Shown here piece after piece: positions 4,270-26,820 of a stretch of 64,000 bases of DNA. Numbering within the stretch: the first letter of the stretch is position 1; every line of letters begins with the position of its first letter. Position numbers and translations under genes: made by a program. The stretch spans positions 248,001 to 312,000 of the forward strand of contig ADNK01002519.1 of assembly GCA_000320545.1 (NCBI GenBank), read 5' to 3'. The DNA comes from Bigelowiella natans CCMP2755 (Eukaryota > Protista > Cercozoa). Under the pieces are notes generated by a model. The model did no database searches and was not told the DNA's origin. It worked only from the letters and a program-made list of their open reading frames with translations.

Positions 4270-5127
4270 TCATCGCCCTTTGATCTTAGCATTACGCCAT
4301 GGATCATTAGGTTTAGCATGATCTGGAATTTGTATCTCTTTGCGAGCCAACCTCCGTACCTGACTCATTCTTCGCGTTGAATCTCTCCTCATTTCTGCAA
4401 GCAAATCTCTTCCTACTCTGTTGGGCTTAACCGTAGACTTCTTCAAGCTGTGCTTGGATACGAATTTTTTTCGTTCGTAATTGGTATGGTGAGCTATGTA
4501 TTTACTCTTTGGTTTAATAAAGGCATCTCTAGCTCCTACTGGACGATCATCTCTAAATTCTTTATCCATTAGTTTCCTGGCCATAGTTTTGTTCACTGGT
4601 GATTTTCCAGGCCCATACTTCTTGCCATATTCTTTCTGCCACTCCATATTTACTTTCTCTTCAGTTCTTATTTTGTAAATCTCCCATTTGAGTTTTTCAG
4701 GACCACTTCTTTTGCTTGCTGTTTTCCGTCCAGATCCCGATGGGGAGGGGGTGGAAGAAGTCGCGCCGGCCGCCCTGGGGAGTTTTGTTCTCGATTTCGT
4801 TTTTTGCCCATTTTTTGGCGATCGAAGCTTTGATATTCTGGGATTACTAGTATTCTTTATCGTCCTACAGATAGGACATTTTGCTAAACGAGACCCTTTA
4901 CTGAGCATCTCGCGTGTGAGATTCGAATAACATTCGTAATGGAACAGATGTGAACAGTCCAATCGAATTCCTCCAATCACACACGGTTCTCCGCAAATTT
5001 TACAGTCTGGTCTTACTGGCTGGCCCCCTCCAAAGTCCTTGGCATTTCCTATTTTCTGTTTGTAAAGACTTTCCCACACAGTAAGTGTAGGGGCATTAGC
5101 TTTGATCCCAGAGTTCCAATCTGCCAT
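4270..5127 (-). CDS. RING-H2 finger protein with basic low-complexity C-terminus (putative E3 ligase), intronless
   Basis: 285-aa ORF with CKIC...CSHLFHYEC...CPIC (C3H2C3 pattern). Confidence 0.8.
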   Translation of the reverse strand: MADWNSGIKANAPTLTVWESLYKQKIGNAKDFGGGQPVRPDCKICGEPCVIGGIRLDCSHLFHYECYSNLTREMLSKGSRLAKCPICRTIKNTSNPRISKLRSPKNGQKTKSRTKLPRAAGATSSTPSPSGSGRKTASKRSGPEKLKWEIYKIRTEEKVNMEWQKEYGKKYGPGKSPVNKTMARKLMDKEFRDDRPVGARDAFIKPKSKYIAHHTNYERKKFVSKHSLKKSTVKPNRVGRDLLAEMRRDSTRRMSQVRRLARKEIQIPDHAKPNDPWRNAKIKGR

Positions 5128-10586: not shown

Positions 10587-10807
10587 TACTAACTAGATCA
10601 ACAACTTGTTATATGGGAAGAAGGGTCGTTTTGGTTATGATTATTGTTGAGTATCACACGCCATTCTTAACTCCGCACAGATTGTTAAAGGGGGGAGGAG
10701 ATTCGCTGCTGAAGGAAGAGGACCTTTGCAAAATCGAGATGTATAAAAGGTGATATTGTGGCCATCACTGTCATTTACTTTTTGTAGTTATGTAGACCTG
10801 TAGTTGT

Positions 10808-10847
<40 letters not shown>

Positions 10848-10938
10848 GTGTGTGTGTACAAGGAGCTCATCCACTCGGGTATATGTCCAAAAAGTTGTCC
10901 AGAAACTCATCAAAAGAAAGCTAAAATCTGCCAAGTAG
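5843..10938 (+). CDS. SET-domain protein-lysine methyltransferase (Rubisco-LSMT/SETD6-like), multi-exon
   Basis: Exons give GMEGGRGIYVKKE, TVAITTFLLDQMQEGRKASSPW, HMPNHDVVPDAGWTFD, QVFISYGRKPNCDLLL, RYPTTLEEDKK and LRMGEKRVLKW, typical of LSMT-class SET proteins. An acidic insert lies at ~8880-9250. The 3' end is inferred. Confidence 0.8.
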
Positions 10939-11139
10939 TTACACACTTCCACTACCTTCAATTTTATGATCAACAATGCATTAGCCGGTCATATCAGCTG
11001 CATCATCATGTTGAATGCGGAAATTGCTATTACGATCAAGTATAATCCTCTGCACACATTACAACCTTGACAGCATATGCGACATCAAGCGTTTCATTAA
11101 TTAGCCCTTTATGCATGCTATAGCTTTACATGCAAGGTG

Positions 11140-11172
<33 letters not shown>

Positions 11173-11436
11173 TTGCTTTTGCAAAAATAGGAAGACCCGC
11201 GCGCTGGGTAAAATAACAATAGCAGACGCAGTTTGAGCGCTGTAGCCGCCGCTTATTTGCACAACTGCACTAGGATGACCATTGCATGTAATATAATGCA
11301 ATTCATTCATTACTTCCTTCTCATGCACGCGCAATATATACAAATGTGTGAGTGTGTGCGTGTGTGCAAAAAGGGCAACTTTTCCACATCATGCGTCATT
11401 CACTACATTAGTACATGCCTTTATTGTGCCATTCTT

Positions 11437-14400
11437 CTAGATATGACTTTTCTTCTCATCCTCGGTAAGAAAACGTGCGTTGGATTCGTCTTTGAGAGAG
11501 GCATCCTCTTGAATTTCTTCTTTCGCCAGTGTACCTGCTTTGTATTTAACTAGCCACTTCATCGAGCCAAGCGCAGCTTTCCCAGTTGCGAGTAGCGGGA
11601 TCTCCTTCACCCTGATGAGAAGATTTGGAAGCTGCACGCCGTTGACCCCATTCTCACGAAGGTGTGTTTGTGCTGCCTTAAGATCCTTCATATCGGCATC
11701 TGGAGTAGCCAAGATGCCGATGAAGGTCTTTTCGAGCTCCGTTGCCTCAAAACCTTCAACAGCGACTGTCATCTTCCCCTCATTGTTCGGCCCCCACTTC
11801 TTCTGCAGCACCTTTTCCAACATGGGGAGAGAGACCATCTCTCCGGCCACCTTCACAAAGCGCTTTTGGCGTCCCATGAGATACAACTTGCCGCCCTCCA
11901 TTCGACCCAAATCACCGGTGTCATACCAGTCTTTCGAGTCCTTATATTCTACGAATGGAATCTTATTCGTTGTTCCCTCGAGATACCCAGAGAAAACGCC
12001 TGGCCCTCGAGCGATGATCAAACCTTTCTCTCCCTTTCCTGCCTCAATGTACTCGCCGCTCTTCCCTTCGATGACAATCGCAATCGATGTTTCTGGGGCG
12101 GTCTTGACAGGTTCTCCGACCCCTTGATTAGGCTGCCCTGGTACGTTGCATGTAAGAACAGGGGAGGTTTCGGTGATGCCGTAGCCCTCGACGACGCCAT
12201 CACGAATGCCAACCTGTGCGGCCTTTTTCACCACGATGTCAGGGAGCTTCTCAGCCCCTGTTACACAGAGCCTCACCGACTCAAGAAGCTTGCGCTCTTT
12301 GCCTGCAGCTGCAAGTAACCCACTCAAGAATCTTGGAGTGCCCAGGTATATCGTCGCTTTCCATTTGGCGACTTGGAAGACAAGGCGTTTCGAGTCTGTT
12401 GGTGATACATAGTATGCAACCTGAATACCTGTTGTGAGGGGGCAGCACGTAGTCGCCGTCCAACCGAAGCTGTGGAAGGGAGGCAAACAGCCCATCAGTA
12501 TATCTGGCTTCTTGGGCTTGGAACGTAGCAGCATCTCTACGATGCCTCCAATGTTGGAAAGGACGTTTGTGTGTGAGAGGGGTACACCCTTTGGGGCGCT
12601 CTCGCTTCCCGATGTGTACAGGATTACACAAGGGTCGGAGGCCTTGACCTCGTCGAGGCTGTATCTTGCTTTGATCTGCTCGGTGTTGAGCTTGGAGGTA
12701 AAGAGCGCAGCCTTGATCATGTCAGTATAGTAGAGCTGCGTCTTGATGTCCTCGTAAAAGACCATCAGATTGCTTCCCTCCCCGTCCTGGAACACCTTGA
12801 GATCCACTGTGGACGCGATTCGCTTGGTGAATTTCTTCGCGGTGAGGACGCATTTGATGTTGGCGGTCTTGATCACATGCCTCAGGTTCTTGCTGCCGTG
12901 CGTCCAATTGATCATCACCGGCACTTTCCCCGCCATCATGAGGCTGAACGCCATGATCGCAACACCGGACGTCGCTGGGAGCATGAGCCCGATATTCTTC
13001 CCTTCAAACATCTCTGGGTGCGCGTTGATGTAATCGGCTAGCAGCACAACCGCCGTTTGCATGCGGCTATAGGTCATAGGGCCTGTGGTATCGTCCCCAA
13101 TGGCGATGTGGTTCTTCATTCGCATCGCATTGTTCCAAAAGGCGAGAGGCAGCAGCTCGCCTTTAGGCAGCTGCGGGGCTGGGCGGTCATGGGGTGGCAG
13201 CCACCCTTTTGGCGCATCCGGGATCTTGATCTGCGCCATCTCCCCCTCCTTTGGGCGTTTCGTGAAGATGGCCCACGCGACCATTTCGACTGTGGAAAGA
13301 TCAGCAGGCTCAACCTCCTCGCAGTTGTAGGTATCTTGCATCCACCCAATCAGCTCTGGAATGCTGATAGACGTCATTCCAAGGTCGAACATCAAGTTGT
13401 GCTTTGGACTCACAACGCCCTTAAACCCGGAGATCTCTGCTACCTTTTTCGCAGCTGCAGCCATGATATCCTTTGGAATCAAGGCAGTGTTCACCACCTC
13501 TTTCTTGACATTGTACCCTGCTTTTCCCAGTCGCGCAGTTACATCGTCCTCGTACTTCTTGGAAAAGTCCTCGAAGTAGTGCTCCGCAGAGTTCCAGCAC
13601 GCCGCACAAAGAATGGAGACGAGAAAGGCTGAATGCGCTATTCTATCGTACCAAAGCAGGCTCGCCATCACCATTGTTACTGTGCCAGCAACTAAATGGA
13701 ACAGCACGTAAATGGCCTTGTTTACCAACGAAATGGCCGATATCTTCTTGAAGAAGCCAAAGCCGCCCGCATCTGTGGAATTGCTAAGAATAAGTGGTAG
13801 TAGACGCTTGGGAGGGGGGAGAGATGGGATCGTTTCGTTCGATCGTTTCTCGTGGTATATTCATCAAATTTTGATTTTTTAAGTGTCTTTTCTAAAGGAT
13901 GGCGACATATAAAATCGATGATTCAGATCCCGTCACACACTACGATCGTGTGACTCCTATCAATCGAATTCCCACATTTTCATCATCACAGAAGGTAAAG
14001 CTCTCAGTCTCATCTGTTTATTTGTCCATCATCGTCGTCATTCATCATCGTCATCATCCTCTTTTTCTTCTCAGAGCGCAATATCTAACCTGTCATGTAC
14101 TCGTAAAGAGTCATCAAACGCTTTTCGCGTGCACGTTTTGCTAAAACTAAGAATACCCATGTATAGTAGCCAATGCACCTTTTCGAACAGAAAAAGCCGT
14201 CATCAGTGTCATAACTGTAAGGACTACTACTACTTCTTCCTTCTTCCTCTTCTTTATTCTTTATCTTCTGTTTCTTAATACTACTACCAGGGGATGTAGA
14301 TGTACTTCAAAGCTCTCGAAACCTGATGACAACAAACGGTTCATCATCCAGCATCATACAGCAGCATACTCATCTTGTAAGTGACGACAAGCTTCAAACA

Positions 14401-15914
14401 GAGATGAGGAAGAAGAGGAAAAGATAGGGTACTATTATTATCATTACTACTATTATCATTACCGATGAAAAGGACGAATATTCTCCTTCCACAGCATCCG
14501 AGAAGAACCCCTCGCCGCAGTGCCAGCGAAGCTGACGTTTATAGCAGTGCCGATCCAATTTTCAATGTCCAAACAGCTCATTCAAAAGCAAAGTTAGTAT
14601 TACCGAATATGTGAATAAAGCAGGGTTGATGTGGATAAAGACCGAGAAGACCTTCTCCTGAAAGGATGTACATACATATAAATAAATAAATAAATAAATA
14701 TATATATATACTCGTTCATAAACAGAGCAGAGGGGGGGACAAGGAGGGTATGGGTAGAGAAACTAGCATCATTTTACCCAGTCGTGAAAGACCAAAGAGT
14801 TATCGAAAACGACGACTGACCAAGCCAAGGGCCCATTGGACACCTACACAGCAAAATTACCATTCAAAAGAGAGCGAGGAATCATAATGGCAGAAGATAT
14901 CAAGAGAGTAGTCCTAGCTTCAGCACAACAATCTGTCTACTATTACTAGTTGTAGTAGTAGTAGTATCAGCAGCAGAGTAGTAGTACCACGAACAACGCT
15001 TTGAAGAAAGTTGAGGACGGATATATCCAACAATAGACCATGCACAAAAAGTTTACCTACATATAAAAAAACATCGCAAAAGAGCGAAATGGCTAATCAT
15101 ATCATGTCAACTATACAAACCTAACAGATCATCAGAGATACGGTATACATGCAATAATATGTACAGCAATTGAAGCAGAGGAACATGCTTGCAGCAGACA
15201 AGGTAGCAGAAGTCGTAGAAGAAGAGCTGCCATCCCATCGACTTGTATCTCTGGAACATCGTCGGGACAAAGAAAACCGATTTAACAGTCCAGATGATAT
15301 AAAACCACCTGCAAACGAATAGCAAGTATGCAACAGTTTAAAAATAAATTAGCAAAGATCAACGTCGTGTCCAAAGTAAGGCAGGGCAGTGTATTTCATC
15401 TCAAAATATAGGTATTAAATAAGTTGAACGGCACCAAAAGTGTGCATGCGGAATGCCACCATACAACGGGATTTGGAACTCTTCATCACTATTTTTCTAG
15501 TTATCGAATCGTTATATTCTGATAGTCCTCCGGAAGTATTACTGGGGGAAAGCGCCAAGGATGTATGAAGTTACTACAACGTTGCAGACCATCAACGTGA
15601 AACTAAGGTGAAGAGAAGAACACAATTCAACCTTACGATTGAGGGAAAGAATTTCGAACAACTTTGAACAGTGTAAATGCCTGTTTGTCTTCACTACTCT
15701 CTATATGATGGATTTCCTTCGCTACTCTCTATATGATGGAATTTATCACTTGATCTTATCGTTCAGCTTGACGAAGCTGATTGCTCGTCTCCCCACCTGA
15801 CAGAGAAAGATTTTCATTGCCAAATTCCGTTGCAAAATAGATTCATGGTGGGCGAAACGTTTAAACCACCTTTCTACTCGAAGGTTTAGCAGAGGAACTC
15901 TCCACGTTCGACAT
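11437..15914 (-). CDS. Fusion protein: GPC1/DUF2838 glycerophosphocholine acyltransferase + acyl-carrier domain + Aas-type acyl-ACP synthetase (adenylation) domain
   Basis: About 10 short 5' exons (ATG 15914) splice to FVKLNDKINFTLMVCNVVVTSYILGAFPQWFY...FFYDFCYLVNFL...SNGPLAWSVVVFDNSLVFHDWEKVFSVFIHINP (GPC1 motifs). The final exon 13772-11437 holds the GPC1 tail (AHSAFLVSILCAACWNSAEHYF), an ACP-like DLGMTSISI, and ANL motifs YTSGSESAPKG, EGYGITETSP, WYDTGDLG, GRQKRFVKVAGEMVSL, PLLATGK. Confidence 0.88.
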
Positions 15915-16523
15915 ACTCTTAAACTCCTCAAAGGATTCGAATCTCTGATGATAGGCCAAATATCACGTTCACGCTGCAGCTGCCATTCACCACCCACGAA
16001 AGAACCCTAACATTTTTCATCTCACCTTGCCCCCAGACGTGATGGAGTAAAGGACCCCGAGAGGAATGGAGTATGCAAGGAGGGATACAAACATATCAGT
16101 AAGATGATTCGAGGAATGAATGGGGGCTTCGTTGATATGTTGATACGATAGTGGTTATCGGAAGAATTCCCAAGAATTCGCAGTTCAATTTCACCCTGCG
16201 ACAATACGAAATTACGAATTTCTTTCTTGAACGTGCTGTCATCTCAGGAGATATTTTTAGCTAGCAAAGGGCCAATGCAAATAGAAAAAGGAACGACGGA
16301 ATCTCACGATTTAGGGCTTTGTTTTAAGGCGTTTCGCTTAAAATGCGACTTTATGCTCGAATTACGTCAAAAACGCACTGCATTTCGGGTGTTTTCTGGA
16401 ACAGCAGATATTGGGTCTGCGACATCGAAACGATGTCAAAAAATATTCTGCGACAAGTTGCCTTCCTCCCCCCGACCGACGGTCGACGTCGTCTGCACCT
16501 CGAATGCCGGAGTGAGTCCCCGG

Positions 16524-23070: not shown

Positions 23071-26000
23071 CTAGGTAGAGTAGCTGATATTTTTCTCTCC
23101 TACGTGTGCAGGTCCATGGGCGGTAAAGAGAAGGGCTCCCCTGGTCCGCCGTGGCACGTAGGTACGCCTAACATTATTAGTGTATACATATATCCTATCA
23201 CTAAGTACCTCATGCTTGTGTTTGTATTTATCCAGGTGTTCTTGAAGGTGCTGGAGCTCCTCTGGCTCAGGCAGGAAGTCGCCGTCCTCGAAGGTAATCG
23301 CGTTAACCATAGGGGTGACCTGGGTAGGGACTTTCTTTTCGAACAGCCTGCTGAAATAGTCAGCAAGCTGCTTGTCTCCTGGTGCGTAGACCACTGTCCT
23401 CTTGTCCCTAAACTCTTCCGTGTCCGCCCTCATAGCTGCATACTCATCGTTAGGCGCTTCGAGCTTGCGGTCGATGCCTAGGAGGGGCTTGTGGTCAGTC
23501 ATTAAGGTGAAGCTGGGCACCGACAGCAGGTAGTATCTTAGTTTCCTCTGCGCCTCAGTCATGGCTTTATACTCTCCTTTTGTAGGGCTGTACTTGGCCT
23601 CAGCTGCTGTGCAGGCCCTGCCCCACACCCGTATGATCTGCTGGTCTTGGGTAAGTACAGCAGCCATACCTAGCTTAGACCAGTCTGTCCATAGGGTAGC
23701 TGGTCTAGTAGTGTCTAGCTTAGCATTCAATAGGGTGTTGCTGCATAACTTTATTAGGTTATCGAAGTGGGCATCAAGGCCAGCCTTGGCCCACACCTTA
23801 GCGAAGCTGAGGCCTACAGAGTTCTCCTTCCGGTAAGCAGTAGTAAAAGCAGCTGCAGTCCTAGCGTAGGTAGGGGAGAACCTACGTAGTATCCAAGCTG
23901 CAGTCTGCAAGAATGACTTTAACTCCTTTGCATTCTTAGGTTTAGGGGCTTGCTGTAGTGCTGCTACTTTCTCGGGGTTTGGGGTGATGCGGCCTTGCTC
24001 CAGGTAATATCCACACCACTTGATTCTTGTAGCTAGGAATGTACACTTCTGCAGTCTAATAGTAAAACCGAAGTGTGCAAACCTAATAAATATATTTTCC
24101 AGGAGGAAGATCTGAGCGACGACTGTGTTGGTACATATTATGTCATCATCCACATACACAAACACAAACACCCACAACACAGACGCCATCCCATCATGTG
24201 TGTATGCCCTGTAGTTCTGACTACTGAACGCATCCCCTGATATGCTTAGGCCGTAAGGGAATACGACGAAGTGCCACTTCCTGTGCCTGCTGGAGAACGC
24301 GGTAATGGGGCGGGAGGTTTTGTGGATGGGTGTCTGCATGTATGATTCATTTTTATCTAGGGAAGAGTAGTATTTGTATCCTATGACGTGTTCAATAACG
24401 TCATCTATCCTTGGTGTAGGTGTCTGGATCCTCTTTATTACTCGGTTGTGGCGGATGAAGTTGTGCGCCAGGCGGAAGAAAGGGTAAGTAGGTTTCTTAG
24501 CTAGCACATGTCTCACGTTCCATGGTGAGTTGCTTGGCTCTATCTTCCCTTCCTTTGCCCATTCATTGATCTGCCACTCTATCTTTTCCCAGTCCGCTTC
24601 CGGTCGCCTATGTTCTGGGTCATTGATGATGCACTCTTCGTATCCCTTCTTTAGCTCGATCTTTACTGGGGTAAGCTTGCTGGAGGGCTTCGTCGTCGGC
24701 TTGGTGATGTCAGAGTACTTCTCGTTTAATATTTTATTAATGTACTTTTTGCCTTTGTCGATATCCCAATCATCAGCTGGGGGGGTCTTGTCCAGTAGCT
24801 CCGTTATCTGTCGGATGGTCTTGCCGGGGTTCTTCTTCCGTAGCTCGGTAGGTGTAGGTAGCTTGTTGTCCGCTAGGTCCATAAACTCTAACGCATTAAC
24901 GCTTGACTCAGAGGTCCACTCGTCAAGCCGTATCATGTTCTGGCTGATGGTCCTGCCTGACTTCTTTGGCAACTTAGCAAAGTATATCTTGTGATTGTAG
25001 AATGATATGATCCCCCCTAATTTTTCTAGGGCATCCTGTCCGAGGAGTAGTTCCATGGATAAAGTCATGGCTACTCGGGTCTTGATTTGGGTCTCCGCGT
25101 CGCTGCCAGGTATCTGTAGCTTTAGCATTAGCTCACCGACGGTCTTCATGGAAGAGCTTCCGTCTGCTTGAGCATATTTACGTTCTTTCTTAGTCACTTG
25201 ATCCAATAGTCCTAACCTTCTTACTGTGCTTAGGCTTATGAAGGACTTCGGCATGCTGCCACTATCCCAAAGGGCAGGTAGTTTCTTGTAGTCTCCGTAG
25301 CTGTCTTTAACTTTAACCTTGGTCATAGCAACTTTGATAGTCCTGTTAGCGTCTTCGTCATTAATGTTGCATACTCCTAAGTTCTTTATGTCGTCTAGGG
25401 TCATGGGCTTGTCTTGGTCCTGCGTTGCTGGTACTGCTGTCTTCGTCGGCGCCTGCTTAAGGTGATCTAATATTCCGTTTATCTGCTGCTGTATAGCATT
25501 GATACTGTTCTGCTTTTTGTTCTTATATTTATTGTTCTTCCCGTTGTTGCTGCCTTGCCATTTGCTGTTGTTATATCCTTGTCCTCTGCCTTTCTTTCTC
25601 TTTAACTTCTCGTAGTGTTCGTTGAGCTGCCTGATCGTCATCCTGGGTCGTCCTTCTTTCCTGTCTCTGCAGTCTTTAGCGGTGTGTTTCCCTTTACGTG
25701 AGCAGTATCCGCAACGTCGGTTACCTTCCCTGTCCTTGTACCAGTCTCGCTGCGGCTTAATAGCGTTAATGTTTCCTATGCCAGGTACCTTAGGGCTGGT
25801 AAACTTGCGGTCCTGCTCCTGCTCGCGTAGGGATATAGCCTGCACTGCTGCCTCCATCGTGGTGTAGCCTTTCTCCGTAACGTAAGTGGATTCCTTTATC
25901 TTTAACTTGAACTCTTCAAACCTTGCCTGATCATCACCTGTGTTGTAATTAAAATCATGTAGTTCGTCGATCATATCCTGGAAGCGCGTGGCAAAGTCTC

Positions 26001-26820
26001 TAACAGGTTCTCTCTCATGCTGCATCATTGCTCTGTATTTTCTAATAGCCTGGGGTAGGGAGTTAGCATCCTGTTCATTTACAAAAGCCTTCATTATCGC
26101 CTCAACGTCTCGTAGCCCACTAACTGTAGTGTGTATTTTCTCTAGCTGCCTGATCCGGGTCCTGCCTGTCTCGTAAAGGTCCATGGCTTGCTTTATTATA
26201 GCTAGCCATTTGAGCTTGTCGTTTTCGGTGGGGTTAGGGGTAAAGTCGCAGAGTATACTCCTAGCGTTCTTCCACCACCTCCTTGCCTCACCTCTTTTCC
26301 CGTTGTATTTCGTTATCATAACCGGTGCTGTTTTAACAGACATGAACTGGGTGTTCCGCTGTACCGGCTGCTGCTGCTTGACGGTGCTCTGGGTCGTCCC
26401 CCGCGAGGCGCCCAGACCCCCGTCGTTCCTAAACAAAGCTGCCCACTCTGGAGGTAAGTCTGCTTCGTAATCCATGATGTCCTGCATGATAGCTGCCCAA
26501 ACATCATGTGTCTGATACTTGTATTCTATCGATACTTTCAGTTTGGCGTAGTTGCTCGCCCTGGGTCGCAAGGCTCGTAATGCCATTACGACCTTCTTGC
26601 TTTCGGCGGCCACGTCCTCGTCGTCCGCCTCGTAGAAGTTCTCCAGTGCCTCTGCTGCTGCATCTGCTTTCTTAATCCCGGGTGCTGGTCCCGGCGGTGC
26701 CTGTGGAGGTGTTCCTCCTCCTTCCTTAGCGTCCGTATCGCCCTTCCTTTCCTGTTTCTGCTCGTGCCCTTGCACGGCCTGCGAGCCAAAGTCCTGCTGT
26801 TCTTCTAGCTGCTGTGACAT
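23071..26820 (-). CDS. Gag-Pol polyprotein (Gag Zn-knuckle, aspartic protease, reverse transcriptase, RNase H, truncated integrase Zn-binding start)
   Basis: 1249-aa ORF: CGYCSRKGKHTAKDC (knuckle), ALWDSGS (protease), FPYGL and YVDD (RT), LWTDWS/TDHKPL/LADYFSR (RNase H), AHGPAHVG (HH of HHCC), then stop. Confidence 0.93.
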   Translation of the reverse strand: MSQQLEEQQDFGSQAVQGHEQKQERKGDTDAKEGGGTPPQAPPGPAPGIKKADAAAEALENFYEADDEDVAAESKKVVMALRALRPRASNYAKLKVSIEYKYQTHDVWAAIMQDIMDYEADLPPEWAALFRNDGGLGASRGTTQSTVKQQQPVQRNTQFMSVKTAPVMITKYNGKRGEARRWWKNARSILCDFTPNPTENDKLKWLAIIKQAMDLYETGRTRIRQLEKIHTTVSGLRDVEAIMKAFVNEQDANSLPQAIRKYRAMMQHEREPVRDFATRFQDMIDELHDFNYNTGDDQARFEEFKLKIKESTYVTEKGYTTMEAAVQAISLREQEQDRKFTSPKVPGIGNINAIKPQRDWYKDREGNRRCGYCSRKGKHTAKDCRDRKEGRPRMTIRQLNEHYEKLKRKKGRGQGYNNSKWQGSNNGKNNKYKNKKQNSINAIQQQINGILDHLKQAPTKTAVPATQDQDKPMTLDDIKNLGVCNINDEDANRTIKVAMTKVKVKDSYGDYKKLPALWDSGSMPKSFISLSTVRRLGLLDQVTKKERKYAQADGSSSMKTVGELMLKLQIPGSDAETQIKTRVAMTLSMELLLGQDALEKLGGIISFYNHKIYFAKLPKKSGRTISQNMIRLDEWTSESSVNALEFMDLADNKLPTPTELRKKNPGKTIRQITELLDKTPPADDWDIDKGKKYINKILNEKYSDITKPTTKPSSKLTPVKIELKKGYEECIINDPEHRRPEADWEKIEWQINEWAKEGKIEPSNSPWNVRHVLAKKPTYPFFRLAHNFIRHNRVIKRIQTPTPRIDDVIEHVIGYKYYSSLDKNESYMQTPIHKTSRPITAFSSRHRKWHFVVFPYGLSISGDAFSSQNYRAYTHDGMASVLWVFVFVYVDDDIICTNTVVAQIFLLENIFIRFAHFGFTIRLQKCTFLATRIKWCGYYLEQGRITPNPEKVAALQQAPKPKNAKELKSFLQTAAWILRRFSPTYARTAAAFTTAYRKENSVGLSFAKVWAKAGLDAHFDNLIKLCSNTLLNAKLDTTRPATLWTDWSKLGMAAVLTQDQQIIRVWGRACTAAEAKYSPTKGEYKAMTEAQRKLRYYLLSVPSFTLMTDHKPLLGIDRKLEAPNDEYAAMRADTEEFRDKRTVVYAPGDKQLADYFSRLFEKKVPTQVTPMVNAITFEDGDFLPEPEELQHLQEHLDKYKHKHEVLSDRIYVYTNNVRRTYVPRRTRGALLFTAHGPAHVGEKNISYST

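What the first reader, a model, noticed from the sequence alone, without database searches (positions are those of the whole stretch)
11437..15914. GPC1 acyltransferase - carrier protein - Aas-type acyl synthetase: a candidate self-contained, CoA-independent lipid acylation enzyme
Seen: the spliced N-terminus carries GPC1/DUF2838 hallmarks (DFCY, NGPLAW, NSLVFH, SVFIH). It continues with no intron or stop into an ACP-like domain (~13479-13261) and a complete adenylation domain with Aas-type signatures (TSGSE.PKG, GR.KRF.K..GEMVSL, terminal Lys in LATGK). The junction lies inside one exon, so it is not a gene-model artefact. Established: yeast and plant GPC1 are stand-alone membrane enzymes that acylate glycerophosphocholine from acyl-CoA; E. 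coli Aas couples a PlsC-type acyltransferase to an acyl-ACP synthetase. Inference: an unrelated eukaryotic acyltransferase takes the PlsC role and the carrier is covalently built in. This gives an assembly line (fatty acid + ATP -> acyl-AMP -> acyl-carrier -> glycero-headgroup) for lyso-PC or another algal lipid. I know of no description of this architecture.
Basis: partly seen in the sequence, partly recalled or inferred. Interest (0 to 1): 0.92.

Follow-up and report, generated by a model that had tools for sequence, protein, structure and literature searches.

The report
Membrane acyltransferase fused to fatty-acid loader
A transcribed gene of the alga Bigelowiella natans joins a yeast-type glycerophosphocholine acyltransferase to a bacterial-type carrier domain and fatty-acid-activating domain. 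It looks like a one-protein machine that puts free fatty acids onto a lipid backbone without coenzyme A, but this has not been tested at the bench.

Summary
The window is from Bigelowiella natans. On the minus strand, 16094-11437, lies a 12-exon gene of 1025 codons. All introns are GT..AG. Spliced contigs from three independent studies and an MMETSP transcript join the exons into one mRNA.

- **GPC1 half:** residues about 47-330 are a complete GPC1/DUF2838 membrane acyltransferase (100.6 bits). The family's invariant Cys and His are kept.
- **Carrier:** residues 348-419 fold as an acyl carrier domain. The attachment serine is conserved, but the Asp before it is lost.
- **Adenylation domain:** residues 460-990 are an intact adenylation domain. 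Its best family matches are Aas-type acyl-ACP synthetases, at twice the score of any CoA ligase.

The key new fact is that the carrier-plus-adenylation module belongs to a large, uncharacterised bacterial family (PVC group) ordered PlsC acyltransferase, carrier, adenylation domain. Two dinoflagellates keep that form. Here the unrelated GPC1 enzyme sits where PlsC should be.

So the built-in carrier is not new. The acyltransferase swap is. The same fusion occurs in a second transcriptome (65% identity), in Pelomyxa schiedti, and in two environmental sequences. No paper found describes it. CoA-independence and the acceptor lipid are untested. Verdict: a new variant of the Aas theme, interest about 0.65.

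The parts
11437..16094 (-). Coding span of the fused gene: 12 exons, 3078 nt, 1025 codons plus stop. The 5' UTR reaches at least 16200 and the 3' UTR at least 11320.
   Evidence: No internal stop. Matches the MMETSP transcript protein P0001 at 896 of 900 positions.
16026..16094 (-). Exon 1 (residues 1-23), ATG at 16094-16092, hydrophobic N-terminus
   Evidence: Joint 15944|16026 in X1, X2 and X4. An in-frame stop lies upstream at 16157-16155. The JGI model P0121 starts here.
15870..15944 (-). Exon 2 (residues 24-48)
   Evidence: Joints; splice sites
15750..15796 (-). Exon 3 (residues 49-64)
   Evidence: Joints
15543..15602 (-). Exon 4 (residues 64-84)
   Evidence: Joints
15200..15308 (-). Exon 5 (residues 84-120). 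Holds the invariant Asp116-x-Cys118-Tyr119; the Cys118 codon is at 15208-15206.
14988..15056 (-). Exon 6 (residues 121-143). The intron before it is retained in one X4 contig.
14778..14843 (-). Exon 7 (residues 144-165). Holds the nearly invariant His163 (codon 14786-14784).
14604..14657 (-). Exon 8 (residues 166-183). Holds the invariant His174 (codon 14633-14631) and Pro177, the likely dyad histidine.
14463..14531 (-). Exon 9 (residues 184-206). Missing from the JGI gene model.
   Evidence: Present in P0001 and in X4 contig 16
14288..14322 (-). Exon 10 (residues 207-218)
14090..14178 (-). Exon 11 (residues 218-248)
   Evidence: Joint 13772|14090 in three runs
11437..13772 (-). Exon 12 (residues 248-1025 plus stop). 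Holds the end of the GPC1 domain, the carrier and the adenylation domain, with no intron.
13525..15875 (-). GPC1/DUF2838 membrane acyltransferase domain, residues about 47-330 (interrupted by introns)
   Evidence: PF10998 at 100.6 bits. The model of the 65%-identical orthologue superposes on a plant GPCAT cluster at TM 0.75 over 275 residues.
13258..13473 (-). Acyl carrier domain, residues 348-419. The predicted phosphopantetheine serine is Ser382 (codon 13371-13369).
   Evidence: AF2 pLDDT 89. The 50 best listed PDB fold matches are almost all acyl or peptidyl carrier proteins. The serine is invariant in 118 of 118 sequences and is the only invariant column among 50.
11980..13137 (-). Adenylation domain, large N-terminal subdomain, residues 460-845
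   Evidence: PF00501 at 204 bits. The conserved core columns are kept.
11545..11979 (-). Adenylation domain, C-terminal subdomain, residues 846-990. Includes the terminal catalytic Lys979 (codon 11580-11578).

Best explanation
The gene encodes one membrane protein that activates a free fatty acid and esterifies it to a glycerol-based lipid head-group. It does this without releasing an acyl-CoA or a free acyl-ACP.

Shown:
- The three domains are in one mRNA.
- Each domain keeps its family's conserved residues.
- The carrier-adenylation module descends from the bacterial PlsC-carrier-synthetase family.
- GPC1 occupies the place of PlsC.

Inferred mechanism:
1. The adenylation domain makes acyl-AMP from fatty acid and ATP.
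2. It loads the acyl group on the phosphopantetheine arm of Ser382.
3. The carrier swings to the cytosolic portal of the GPC1 domain.
4. The Cys118/His174 dyad takes the acyl group and passes it to the acceptor.

By family analogy the acceptor is glycerophosphocholine, giving lyso-PC, but this is the least certain step. The enzyme would recombine the two products of complete phospholipid deacylation (head-group and free fatty acid) in a closed channel, as E. coli Aas does for 2-acyl-GPE.
For: - One mRNA: spliced contigs from three studies and the MMETSP transcript.
- GPC1 domain is complete. PF10998 scores 100.6 bits. The fold matches plant GPCAT at TM 0.75. Cys and His are invariant in 18 fused and stand-alone members, including fungal proteins named Gpc1.
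- The Cys/His dyad is proposed for the GPC1 family in bioRxiv 10.1101/2022.07.06.498872. Yeast and plant GPCAT also transacylate from lysolipids (PMC5122774), which fits a covalent acyl-enzyme able to take any thioester.
- Carrier: ACP fold and invariant serine. Pfam is above threshold in two orthologues.
- Adenylation domain: the four best NCBIfam families are all Aas or acyl-ACP ligase types (352-206 bits), against 176 bits for the best CoA ligase. It keeps 98 of 113 family-conserved columns.
- Relatives carry PlsC, carrier and adenylation domain in the same order. The eukaryotic fused and PlsC forms make one clade among the bacterial ones.
- E. coli Aas channels its acyl-ACP only to its own acyltransferase domain, and chlamydial AasC makes acyl-ACP, not acyl-CoA (PMC6167442).
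- The fusion is conserved at 39% identity in Pelomyxa, with all three domains intact.
- A PPTase-family locus exists in the genome.
Against: - No biochemical data exist for this protein or for any PlsC-carrier-synthetase relative.
- The Asp before the carrier serine is present in 115 of 118 relatives. It is replaced in four of the five GPC1-linked proteins (sequences). The Pfam carrier score in this species is below threshold.
- Characterised GPC1 enzymes use acyl-CoA.
- Membrane topology was not established, so it is not shown that the carrier can reach the GPC1 active site.
- The acceptor is unknown.
Confidence: 0.6

Rival explanations
1. This would be an acyl-CoA synthetase fused to a GPC acyltransferase. 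The carrier-like domain would be a degenerate linker that is not pantetheinylated. The adenylation domain would make acyl-CoA (or hand over acyl-AMP directly) next to the GPC1 domain. The enzyme would then be CoA-dependent substrate channelling, not a carrier line.
For: - The Asp of the carrier motif is lost in four of the five GPC1-linked proteins (sequences).
- The Pfam PP-binding score is 15.4 bits, below the 20.8 cut-off.
- Known GPC1 enzymes use acyl-CoA (PMC5122774).
Against: - The serine is kept in all five GPC1-linked proteins down to 33-39% identity. The ACP fold is confidently predicted.
- The adenylation domain scores twice as high on acyl-ACP synthetase families as on CoA ligases.
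- A characterised member of that group makes no acyl-CoA (PMC6167442).
Confidence: 0.2
2. The machinery works as proposed but with another job. The GPC1-type domain would acylate something other than GPC. Candidates are a lysophospholipid (as Aas does), a deacylated betaine-lipid backbone, or another hydroxyl acceptor. Alternatively it would run as a transacylase that moves acyl groups between lipids and the carrier.
For: - The fused GPC1 domains form their own subgroup. They score 121-208 bits with each other and 94 bits or less with stand-alone members.
- The genome already has two stand-alone DUF2838 genes that could cover the canonical job.
- GPCAT transacylates from lysolipids (PMC5122774).
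- The related TMEM164 uses a phospholipid donor (bioRxiv 10.1101/2022.07.06.498872).
Against: The only characterised PF10998 members acylate GPC. The full fold and the conserved residues are shared with them.
Confidence: 0.17
3. This would be an artefact: two neighbouring genes merged by a gene model, or a bacterial contaminant joined to an algal gene in assembly.
For: The last exon has no introns and its module is of bacterial ancestry.
Against: - The junction lies inside one open exon that begins within the GPC1 domain.
- One 2751-nt RNA contig runs from exon 6 to the 3' end.
- GC3 is equal in both parts.
- The same fusion is found in four other sources.
Confidence: 0.01

Closest known systems
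[quoted passage not shown]
   Same: An N-terminal acyltransferase is followed by a C-terminal Aas-type adenylation domain. It is membrane-bound. It reacylates a deacylation product with a free fatty acid via a carrier thioester that is not released (PMC6167442). The adenylation domain is homologous (206.5 bits).
   Different: Aas uses a PlsC-type acyltransferase and borrows the cell's free ACP. Here the acyltransferase is the unrelated multi-pass GPC1 fold and the carrier is part of the chain.
Bacterial PlsC-carrier-synthetase proteins of about 890 aa (Chlamydiae, Lentisphaerae, Planctomycetes), and the roughly 1280-aa forms with an MFS flippase domain; dinoflagellate copies P0010 and P0126
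   Same: The carrier and adenylation module is homologous at 35-39% identity. The domain order is the same, and both have a built-in carrier with the invariant serine. The eukaryotic copies share a clade with the fused proteins.
   Different: They carry PlsC (PF01553) at the N-terminus. The window protein has no PlsC and has DUF2838 there instead. No paper found here describes them, so they do not supply a tested mechanism.
Yeast Gpc1 and plant GPCAT (PF10998; PMC5122774)
   Same: The whole membrane fold is shared (TM 0.75 over 275 residues). PF10998 scores 100.6 bits. The invariant Cys, His, Asn and Pro are shared. Identity to fungal Gpc1 is 25-28% over about 88% of the domain.
   Different: The known enzymes are stand-alone and take acyl-CoA or lysolipids as donors. 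This one carries its own donor-making module, plus an extra N-terminal hydrophobic segment.
Chlamydia trachomatis AasC + LpaT (split system)
   Same: The adenylation domain hits the AasC-type family NF004971 at 300.9 bits. AasC makes acyl-ACP only (PMC6167442).
   Different: In that system the synthetase, the acyltransferase and the ACP are three separate proteins.

Membership tests
GPC1 / GPCAT (Pfam PF10998, DUF2838) | Match to PF10998 above the gathering score, over the whole profile | tested here: met
   P0121 (the JGI model of this gene) scores 100.6 bits over profile positions 1-111. Orthologues score 102.5 and 99.2 bits.
GPC1 / GPCAT (Pfam PF10998, DUF2838) | Complete multi-pass membrane fold of characterised members | tested here: met
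   The model of the 65%-identical orthologue (core pLDDT 80-95) superposes on a plant GPCAT cluster at TM 0.75/0.72 and rmsd 2.4 A over residues 50-333. The test used the orthologue, not the spliced window protein.
GPC1 / GPCAT (Pfam PF10998, DUF2838) | Predicted catalytic Cys/His dyad of the AIG1/TMEM164/GPC1 superfamily | tested here: met
   Cys118 and His174 are invariant in 18 fused and stand-alone members. They lie in the helices that would be helices 2 and 4 of the core if the core starts at the helix at residues 86-111. The dyad is proposed in bioRxiv 10.1101/2022.07.06.498872.
GPC1 / GPCAT (Pfam PF10998, DUF2838) | Acylates glycerophosphocholine from acyl-CoA | not testable with these tools
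   Needs an enzyme assay.
Aas-type acyl-ACP synthetase | ANL adenylation domain with intact core motifs and terminal lysine | tested here: met
   PF00501 scores 204 bits. It keeps 98 of 113 columns that are at least 90% conserved in 116 relatives, including all core motif columns and Lys979.
Aas-type acyl-ACP synthetase | Closer to acyl-ACP synthetase families than to acyl-CoA ligases | tested here: met
   NF006386 351.7, NF004971 300.9, NF005291 294.8 and NF005959 206.5 bits, against 176.3 for the best CoA ligase. All are below the curated whole-protein cut-offs.
Aas-type acyl-ACP synthetase | N-terminal PlsC-type acyltransferase domain (PF01553) | tested here: not met
   No PF01553 hit in P0121, P0001, P0002 or P0125. 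It is present in the bacterial and dinoflagellate relatives.
Aas-type acyl-ACP synthetase | Loads a carrier thiol, not CoA | not testable with these tools
   Needs an assay with and without CoA.
Acyl carrier domain (PF00550, PP-binding) | Pfam match above the gathering score | tested here: inconclusive
   The window protein scores 15.4 bits against a 20.8 cut-off. Orthologues score 23.8 and 22.2 bits, above the cut-off.
Acyl carrier domain (PF00550, PP-binding) | Helical carrier fold with the serine at the start of the second long helix | tested here: met
   pLDDT is 89. The 50 best listed PDB matches are almost all ACP or PCP chains, with target TM up to 0.84 and rmsd about 1.5 A. Ser382 is invariant.
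Acyl carrier domain (PF00550, PP-binding) | Asp directly before the attachment serine | tested here: not met
   Thr here, and Gln, Asn and Asn in three other GPC1-linked proteins. Asp in 115 of 118 relatives.
Acyl carrier domain (PF00550, PP-binding) | Serine actually carries phosphopantetheine | not testable with these tools
   The only supporting fact is that the genome has a PF01648 transferase locus (26.3 bits).

The most novel reading that the evidence does not exclude
A eukaryotic, CoA-independent lipid acylation line arose when the PlsC domain of a bacterial-derived PlsC-carrier-synthetase protein was displaced by the unrelated GPC1 enzyme. This would show that GPC1-family enzymes can take their acyl group from a protein-bound phosphopantetheine thioester. 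It would also show that some protists re-esterify free fatty acids to deacylated lipid head-groups outside the acyl-CoA pool.
Probability: 0.5. Interest if true: 0.8.

Novelty: new variant of a known kind. Interest (0 to 1): 0.65.

Why it matters
- **Donor question for GPC1:** GPC1/GPCAT was cloned only in 2016. It has no solved structure, and its catalytic mechanism rests on a predicted Cys/His dyad. A natural fusion to a carrier and loader is an independent hint about what kind of donor that active site can accept, and it gives a clean handle to test it.
- **Domain displacement:** two unrelated acyltransferases sit in the same slot of a conserved module. This argues that the module is a portable "activate and hand over" unit.
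- **Lipid metabolism:** in eukaryotes fatty-acid activation is taken to mean acyl-CoA. A closed carrier route would be a small but real addition.
- **Bacterial relatives:** the hundreds of bacterial PlsC-carrier-synthetase proteins appear never to have been studied either, so the finding also points at them.
- **Engineering:** a one-protein unit that turns fatty acid plus ATP into lysolipid could be useful.

Tried and rejected
- **Carrier-GPC1 docking (collected):** the GPC1 domain was docked against the carrier domain of the orthologue P0002. The result was no verdict (score 0.00). It is not used as evidence either way.
- **Foldseek of the GPC1 model against PDB:** no meaningful match. There seems to be no solved structure of this fold.
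- **Sequence search of PDB with the carrier-adenylation part:** only generic ANL enzymes were found (best FadD-1, E 3e-21). No Aas structure came up.
- **ESM Atlas feature search:** only generic AMP-binding clusters. No large cluster has the fused architecture.
- **Hydropathy count of membrane helices:** too crude to give a topology, so it was dropped.
- **Careful tree:** it did not finish in time, so only quick trees are reported. The branching among the fused forms and the dinoflagellate PlsC forms is unresolved, so a single origin of the fusion is not shown by the module tree alone.
- **DNA of two contigs:** the DNA of the contigs carrying P0003 and P0133 could not be fetched. For P0003 only the gene calls are known.
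- **Spliced model:** the joined spliced protein was never sent to any search tool. The public proteins P0001 and P0121, the orthologue P0002 and single exons by reference stood in for it. Joining was done only inside a local script, to check frame and length.
- **Rejected ideas:** gene-model artefact; contamination; and a recent graft on a resident B. natans GPC1 gene, because the fused GPC1 half is closer to other fused halves than to the genome's own paralogues.
Full report
**Source and gene structure**

A cluster member of the encoded protein is the JGI model Bigna1/80076 of Bigelowiella natans, so the window comes from that chlorarachniophyte alga. The finding lies on the minus strand. Six-frame reading and comparison with two database proteins gave a 12-exon model, 16094-11437. 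It has 3078 coding bases and 1025 codons, no internal stop, and every intron is GT..AG.

**Transcript evidence**

Contigs of three public runs from three different studies were laid on 11300-16200.
- They show ten of the eleven junctions as CT..AC joints at exactly the predicted bases.
- One 2751-base contig runs from exon 6 through the whole last exon.
- Another contig strings exons 1 to 11 together and also covers the one junction that fell in a skipped repeat.

The runs are labelled RNA only by guess, but intron-less contigs can only be cDNA. An MMETSP transcript protein (P0001) follows the same splice chain from exon 6 to the end. It agrees at 896 of 900 residues.

The public JGI model differs in two places: a later donor for exon 5, and exon 9 skipped. 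The RNA data favour the model given here. Its start (15914) is 180 bases short of the real ATG.

**The N-terminal half is a full GPC1 enzyme**

- The JGI protein scores 100.6 bits on PF10998 over the whole profile.
- The first 343 residues of the 65%-identical orthologue P0002 find fungal proteins that UniRef names glycerophosphocholine acyltransferase 1. Identity is 25-28% over about 88% of the length.
- An AlphaFold model of that region (core pLDDT 80-95) superposes on a plant GPCAT cluster of the ESM Atlas. TM is 0.75 over 275 residues, covering residues 50-333. Nothing in the PDB resembles it.
- In an alignment of 18 fused and stand-alone members only six columns are invariant. They include Cys118 and His174 (window-protein numbering).
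- A preprint that defines the AIG1/TMEM164/GPC1 superfamily predicts exactly such a Cys/His dyad in GPC1. It proves the cysteine in TMEM164 (bioRxiv 10.1101/2022.07.06.498872).
- One fused relative has Phe at the other conserved histidine (His163) but keeps His174. His174 is therefore the better candidate for the dyad.
- The domain ends with the same amphipathic helix as the fungal enzymes. The chain then continues into the carrier.

**The middle is a carrier domain**

- Pfam PP-binding scores only 15.4 bits here, below the 20.8 cut-off. It scores 23.8 and 22.2 bits in two orthologues.
- An AlphaFold model of residues 332-442, built on a 50-sequence alignment, has pLDDT 89. Its 50 best listed PDB matches are almost all acyl or peptidyl carrier proteins, with target TM up to 0.84.
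- The attachment serine (Ser382) is present in all 118 aligned relatives. It is the only invariant column of the 50-sequence alignment.
- The Asp that precedes it in 115 of 118 relatives is Thr here. It is Gln, Asn and Asn in three other GPC1-linked proteins. This real departure is the main reason for doubt.

**The C-terminal half is an intact Aas-type adenylation domain**

- PF00501 scores 204 bits.
- Among NCBIfam models the four best are all Aas or acyl-ACP ligase families (351.7, 300.9, 294.8 and 206.5 bits). The best acyl-CoA ligase reaches 176.3 bits.
- Of 113 columns that are at least 90% conserved in 116 bacterial-type relatives, the window protein keeps 98. These include every core-motif column and the terminal lysine.

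**Where the module comes from**

The nearest relatives of the carrier-adenylation part are hundreds of bacterial proteins of about 890 residues. The named ones are from Lentisphaeria, Parachlamydiaceae, Chlamydiales and Planctomycetes. Their Pfam order is PlsC acyltransferase, PP-binding, AMP-binding. A 1280-residue form adds an MFS domain. Two dinoflagellate transcripts (one from Yihiella yeosuensis) have the same PlsC form.

In quick maximum-likelihood trees the fused proteins and the dinoflagellate PlsC forms make one eukaryotic group among the bacterial ones. Support is 99 without the long-branched P0133 and 94 with it. The order inside the group is unresolved.

The simplest reading is that a bacterial PlsC-carrier-synthetase gene entered eukaryotes, and in one line GPC1, a eukaryote-only family (PMC5122774), replaced PlsC. 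The built-in carrier is therefore inherited, not new. The swap of the acyltransferase is what is new.

**How widespread the fusion is**

A full HMMER scan of 1.84 billion representatives, a word-based search of 5.8 billion sequences, and Pfam checks found the three-domain fusion in four further sources:
- an unnamed transcript of JGI sample 3300017235 (P0002, 65% identity);
- Pelomyxa schiedti KAH3761595.1 (P0125, 39% identity, all three Pfam domains above threshold);
- an ENA metagenome protein (P0133), where Pfam calls DUF2838 and AMP-binding only;
- a Logan contig, where a 336-residue DUF2838 frame, a 100-residue frame and the carrier-adenylation frame P0003 follow each other on one strand.

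The GPC1 halves of the fused proteins resemble each other far more (121-208 bits) than they resemble stand-alone members (94 bits or less). That includes the two stand-alone DUF2838 genes of B. natans itself. This fits one old fusion that is now patchily distributed. The genome has only one copy of the carrier-adenylation module.

**Mechanism**

E. coli Aas links an N-terminal acyltransferase to a C-terminal acyl-ACP synthetase, and its acyl-ACP can only be used by its own acyltransferase domain. Chlamydial AasC makes acyl-ACP and no acyl-CoA (PMC6167442). Yeast and plant GPCAT accept acyl-CoA and also lysolipids as donors (PMC5122774). That behaviour suits a covalent acyl-cysteine intermediate. 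Acyl-CoA and acyl-carrier also present the same acyl-phosphopantetheine thioester (established chemistry).

I therefore infer this relay: fatty acid plus ATP, to acyl-AMP, to acyl-S-carrier on Ser382, to Cys118, to acceptor hydroxyl. Only the sequence features are shown; every chemical step is inference. GPC as acceptor is the weakest link. The fused GPC1 domains are a separate subgroup, and the genome has two canonical-looking paralogues.

**Literature**

No paper in the held library combines DUF2838, PF10998 or GPCAT with AMP-binding, Bigelowiella or Pelomyxa in this sense. None was found that describes the PlsC-carrier-synthetase proteins. The Pelomyxa protein is simply named AMP-binding protein.

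Note s1-741755 proposed that intron asymmetry marks a graft onto a resident GPC1 gene.
- The asymmetry is real. All 11 introns fall in the first 742 of 3078 coding bases, with a chance of 1.6e-7 under even spacing.
- The intron-free exon begins inside the GPC1 domain.
- GC3 is equal in both parts (0.628 and 0.637).
- The fusion predates this species.

So bacterial ancestry of the module is supported, but a recent local graft is not. Loss of 3' introns through a partial cDNA is an alternative, and the matter is unresolved.

**Limits**

- The spliced protein itself was not sent to any search. Public proteins and single exons stood in for it.
- Folds were made on the orthologue or on one exon.
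- Topology, pantetheinylation, donor and acceptor are untested.
- The docking job gave no verdict and is not used.

Noticed in passing
window 15200-15308 and 14463-14531: The public JGI gene model (P0121, 1007 aa) uses a later donor after exon 5, which adds five residues. It also skips exon 9 (23 residues). RNA contigs and the MMETSP transcript support the 1025-residue model instead.
   Followed up: yes
window 11437-11460: The MMETSP transcript protein P0001 reads on past the window's stop into another frame and ends 11 residues later, which fits a 4-base difference just before the stop. The three laid runs agree with the window. This is probably a strain difference.
   Followed up: partly
window 13786: Contigs of runs X1 and X4 match the window rightwards from 13786, inside intron 11 and 14 bases from the exon-12 acceptor. 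Leftwards they carry 99 bases that are not in the laid stretch. This could be an alternative splice or an overlapping transcript.
   Followed up: no
window 15057-15199 and 13773-14089: Intron 5 is retained in one X4 contig. Unspliced contigs across intron 11 occur at low depth in all three runs. All of them lack one base at 14041 relative to the window.
   Followed up: no
G000:C1680:42959-43291 (L003) and G000:C2233:14761-15087 (L002): There are two stand-alone DUF2838 paralogues in the same genome. One has a complete 305-residue open frame and the other a 346-residue frame, apparently without introns. The fused copy, in contrast, has 11 introns.
   Followed up: partly
proteins P0126 (Yihiella yeosuensis) and P0010: Dinoflagellate transcripts encode the bacterial-type PlsC, carrier and adenylation architecture. 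They group with the GPC1 fusions rather than with bacteria. This is a eukaryotic Aas-like enzyme for which no description was found in the held papers.
   Followed up: partly
window 23071-26820, minus strand: A 1249-residue open frame carries reverse transcriptase and RNase H domains, so it is a retroelement.
   Followed up: no
window 4270-5127, minus strand: A 285-residue open frame has a RING-finger match just under the Pfam thresholds.
   Followed up: no
window 10800-11340: A dinucleotide (CA/TG) microsatellite and a trinucleotide run that reads as poly-Cys lie in the region just downstream of the gene's 3' end.
   Followed up: no
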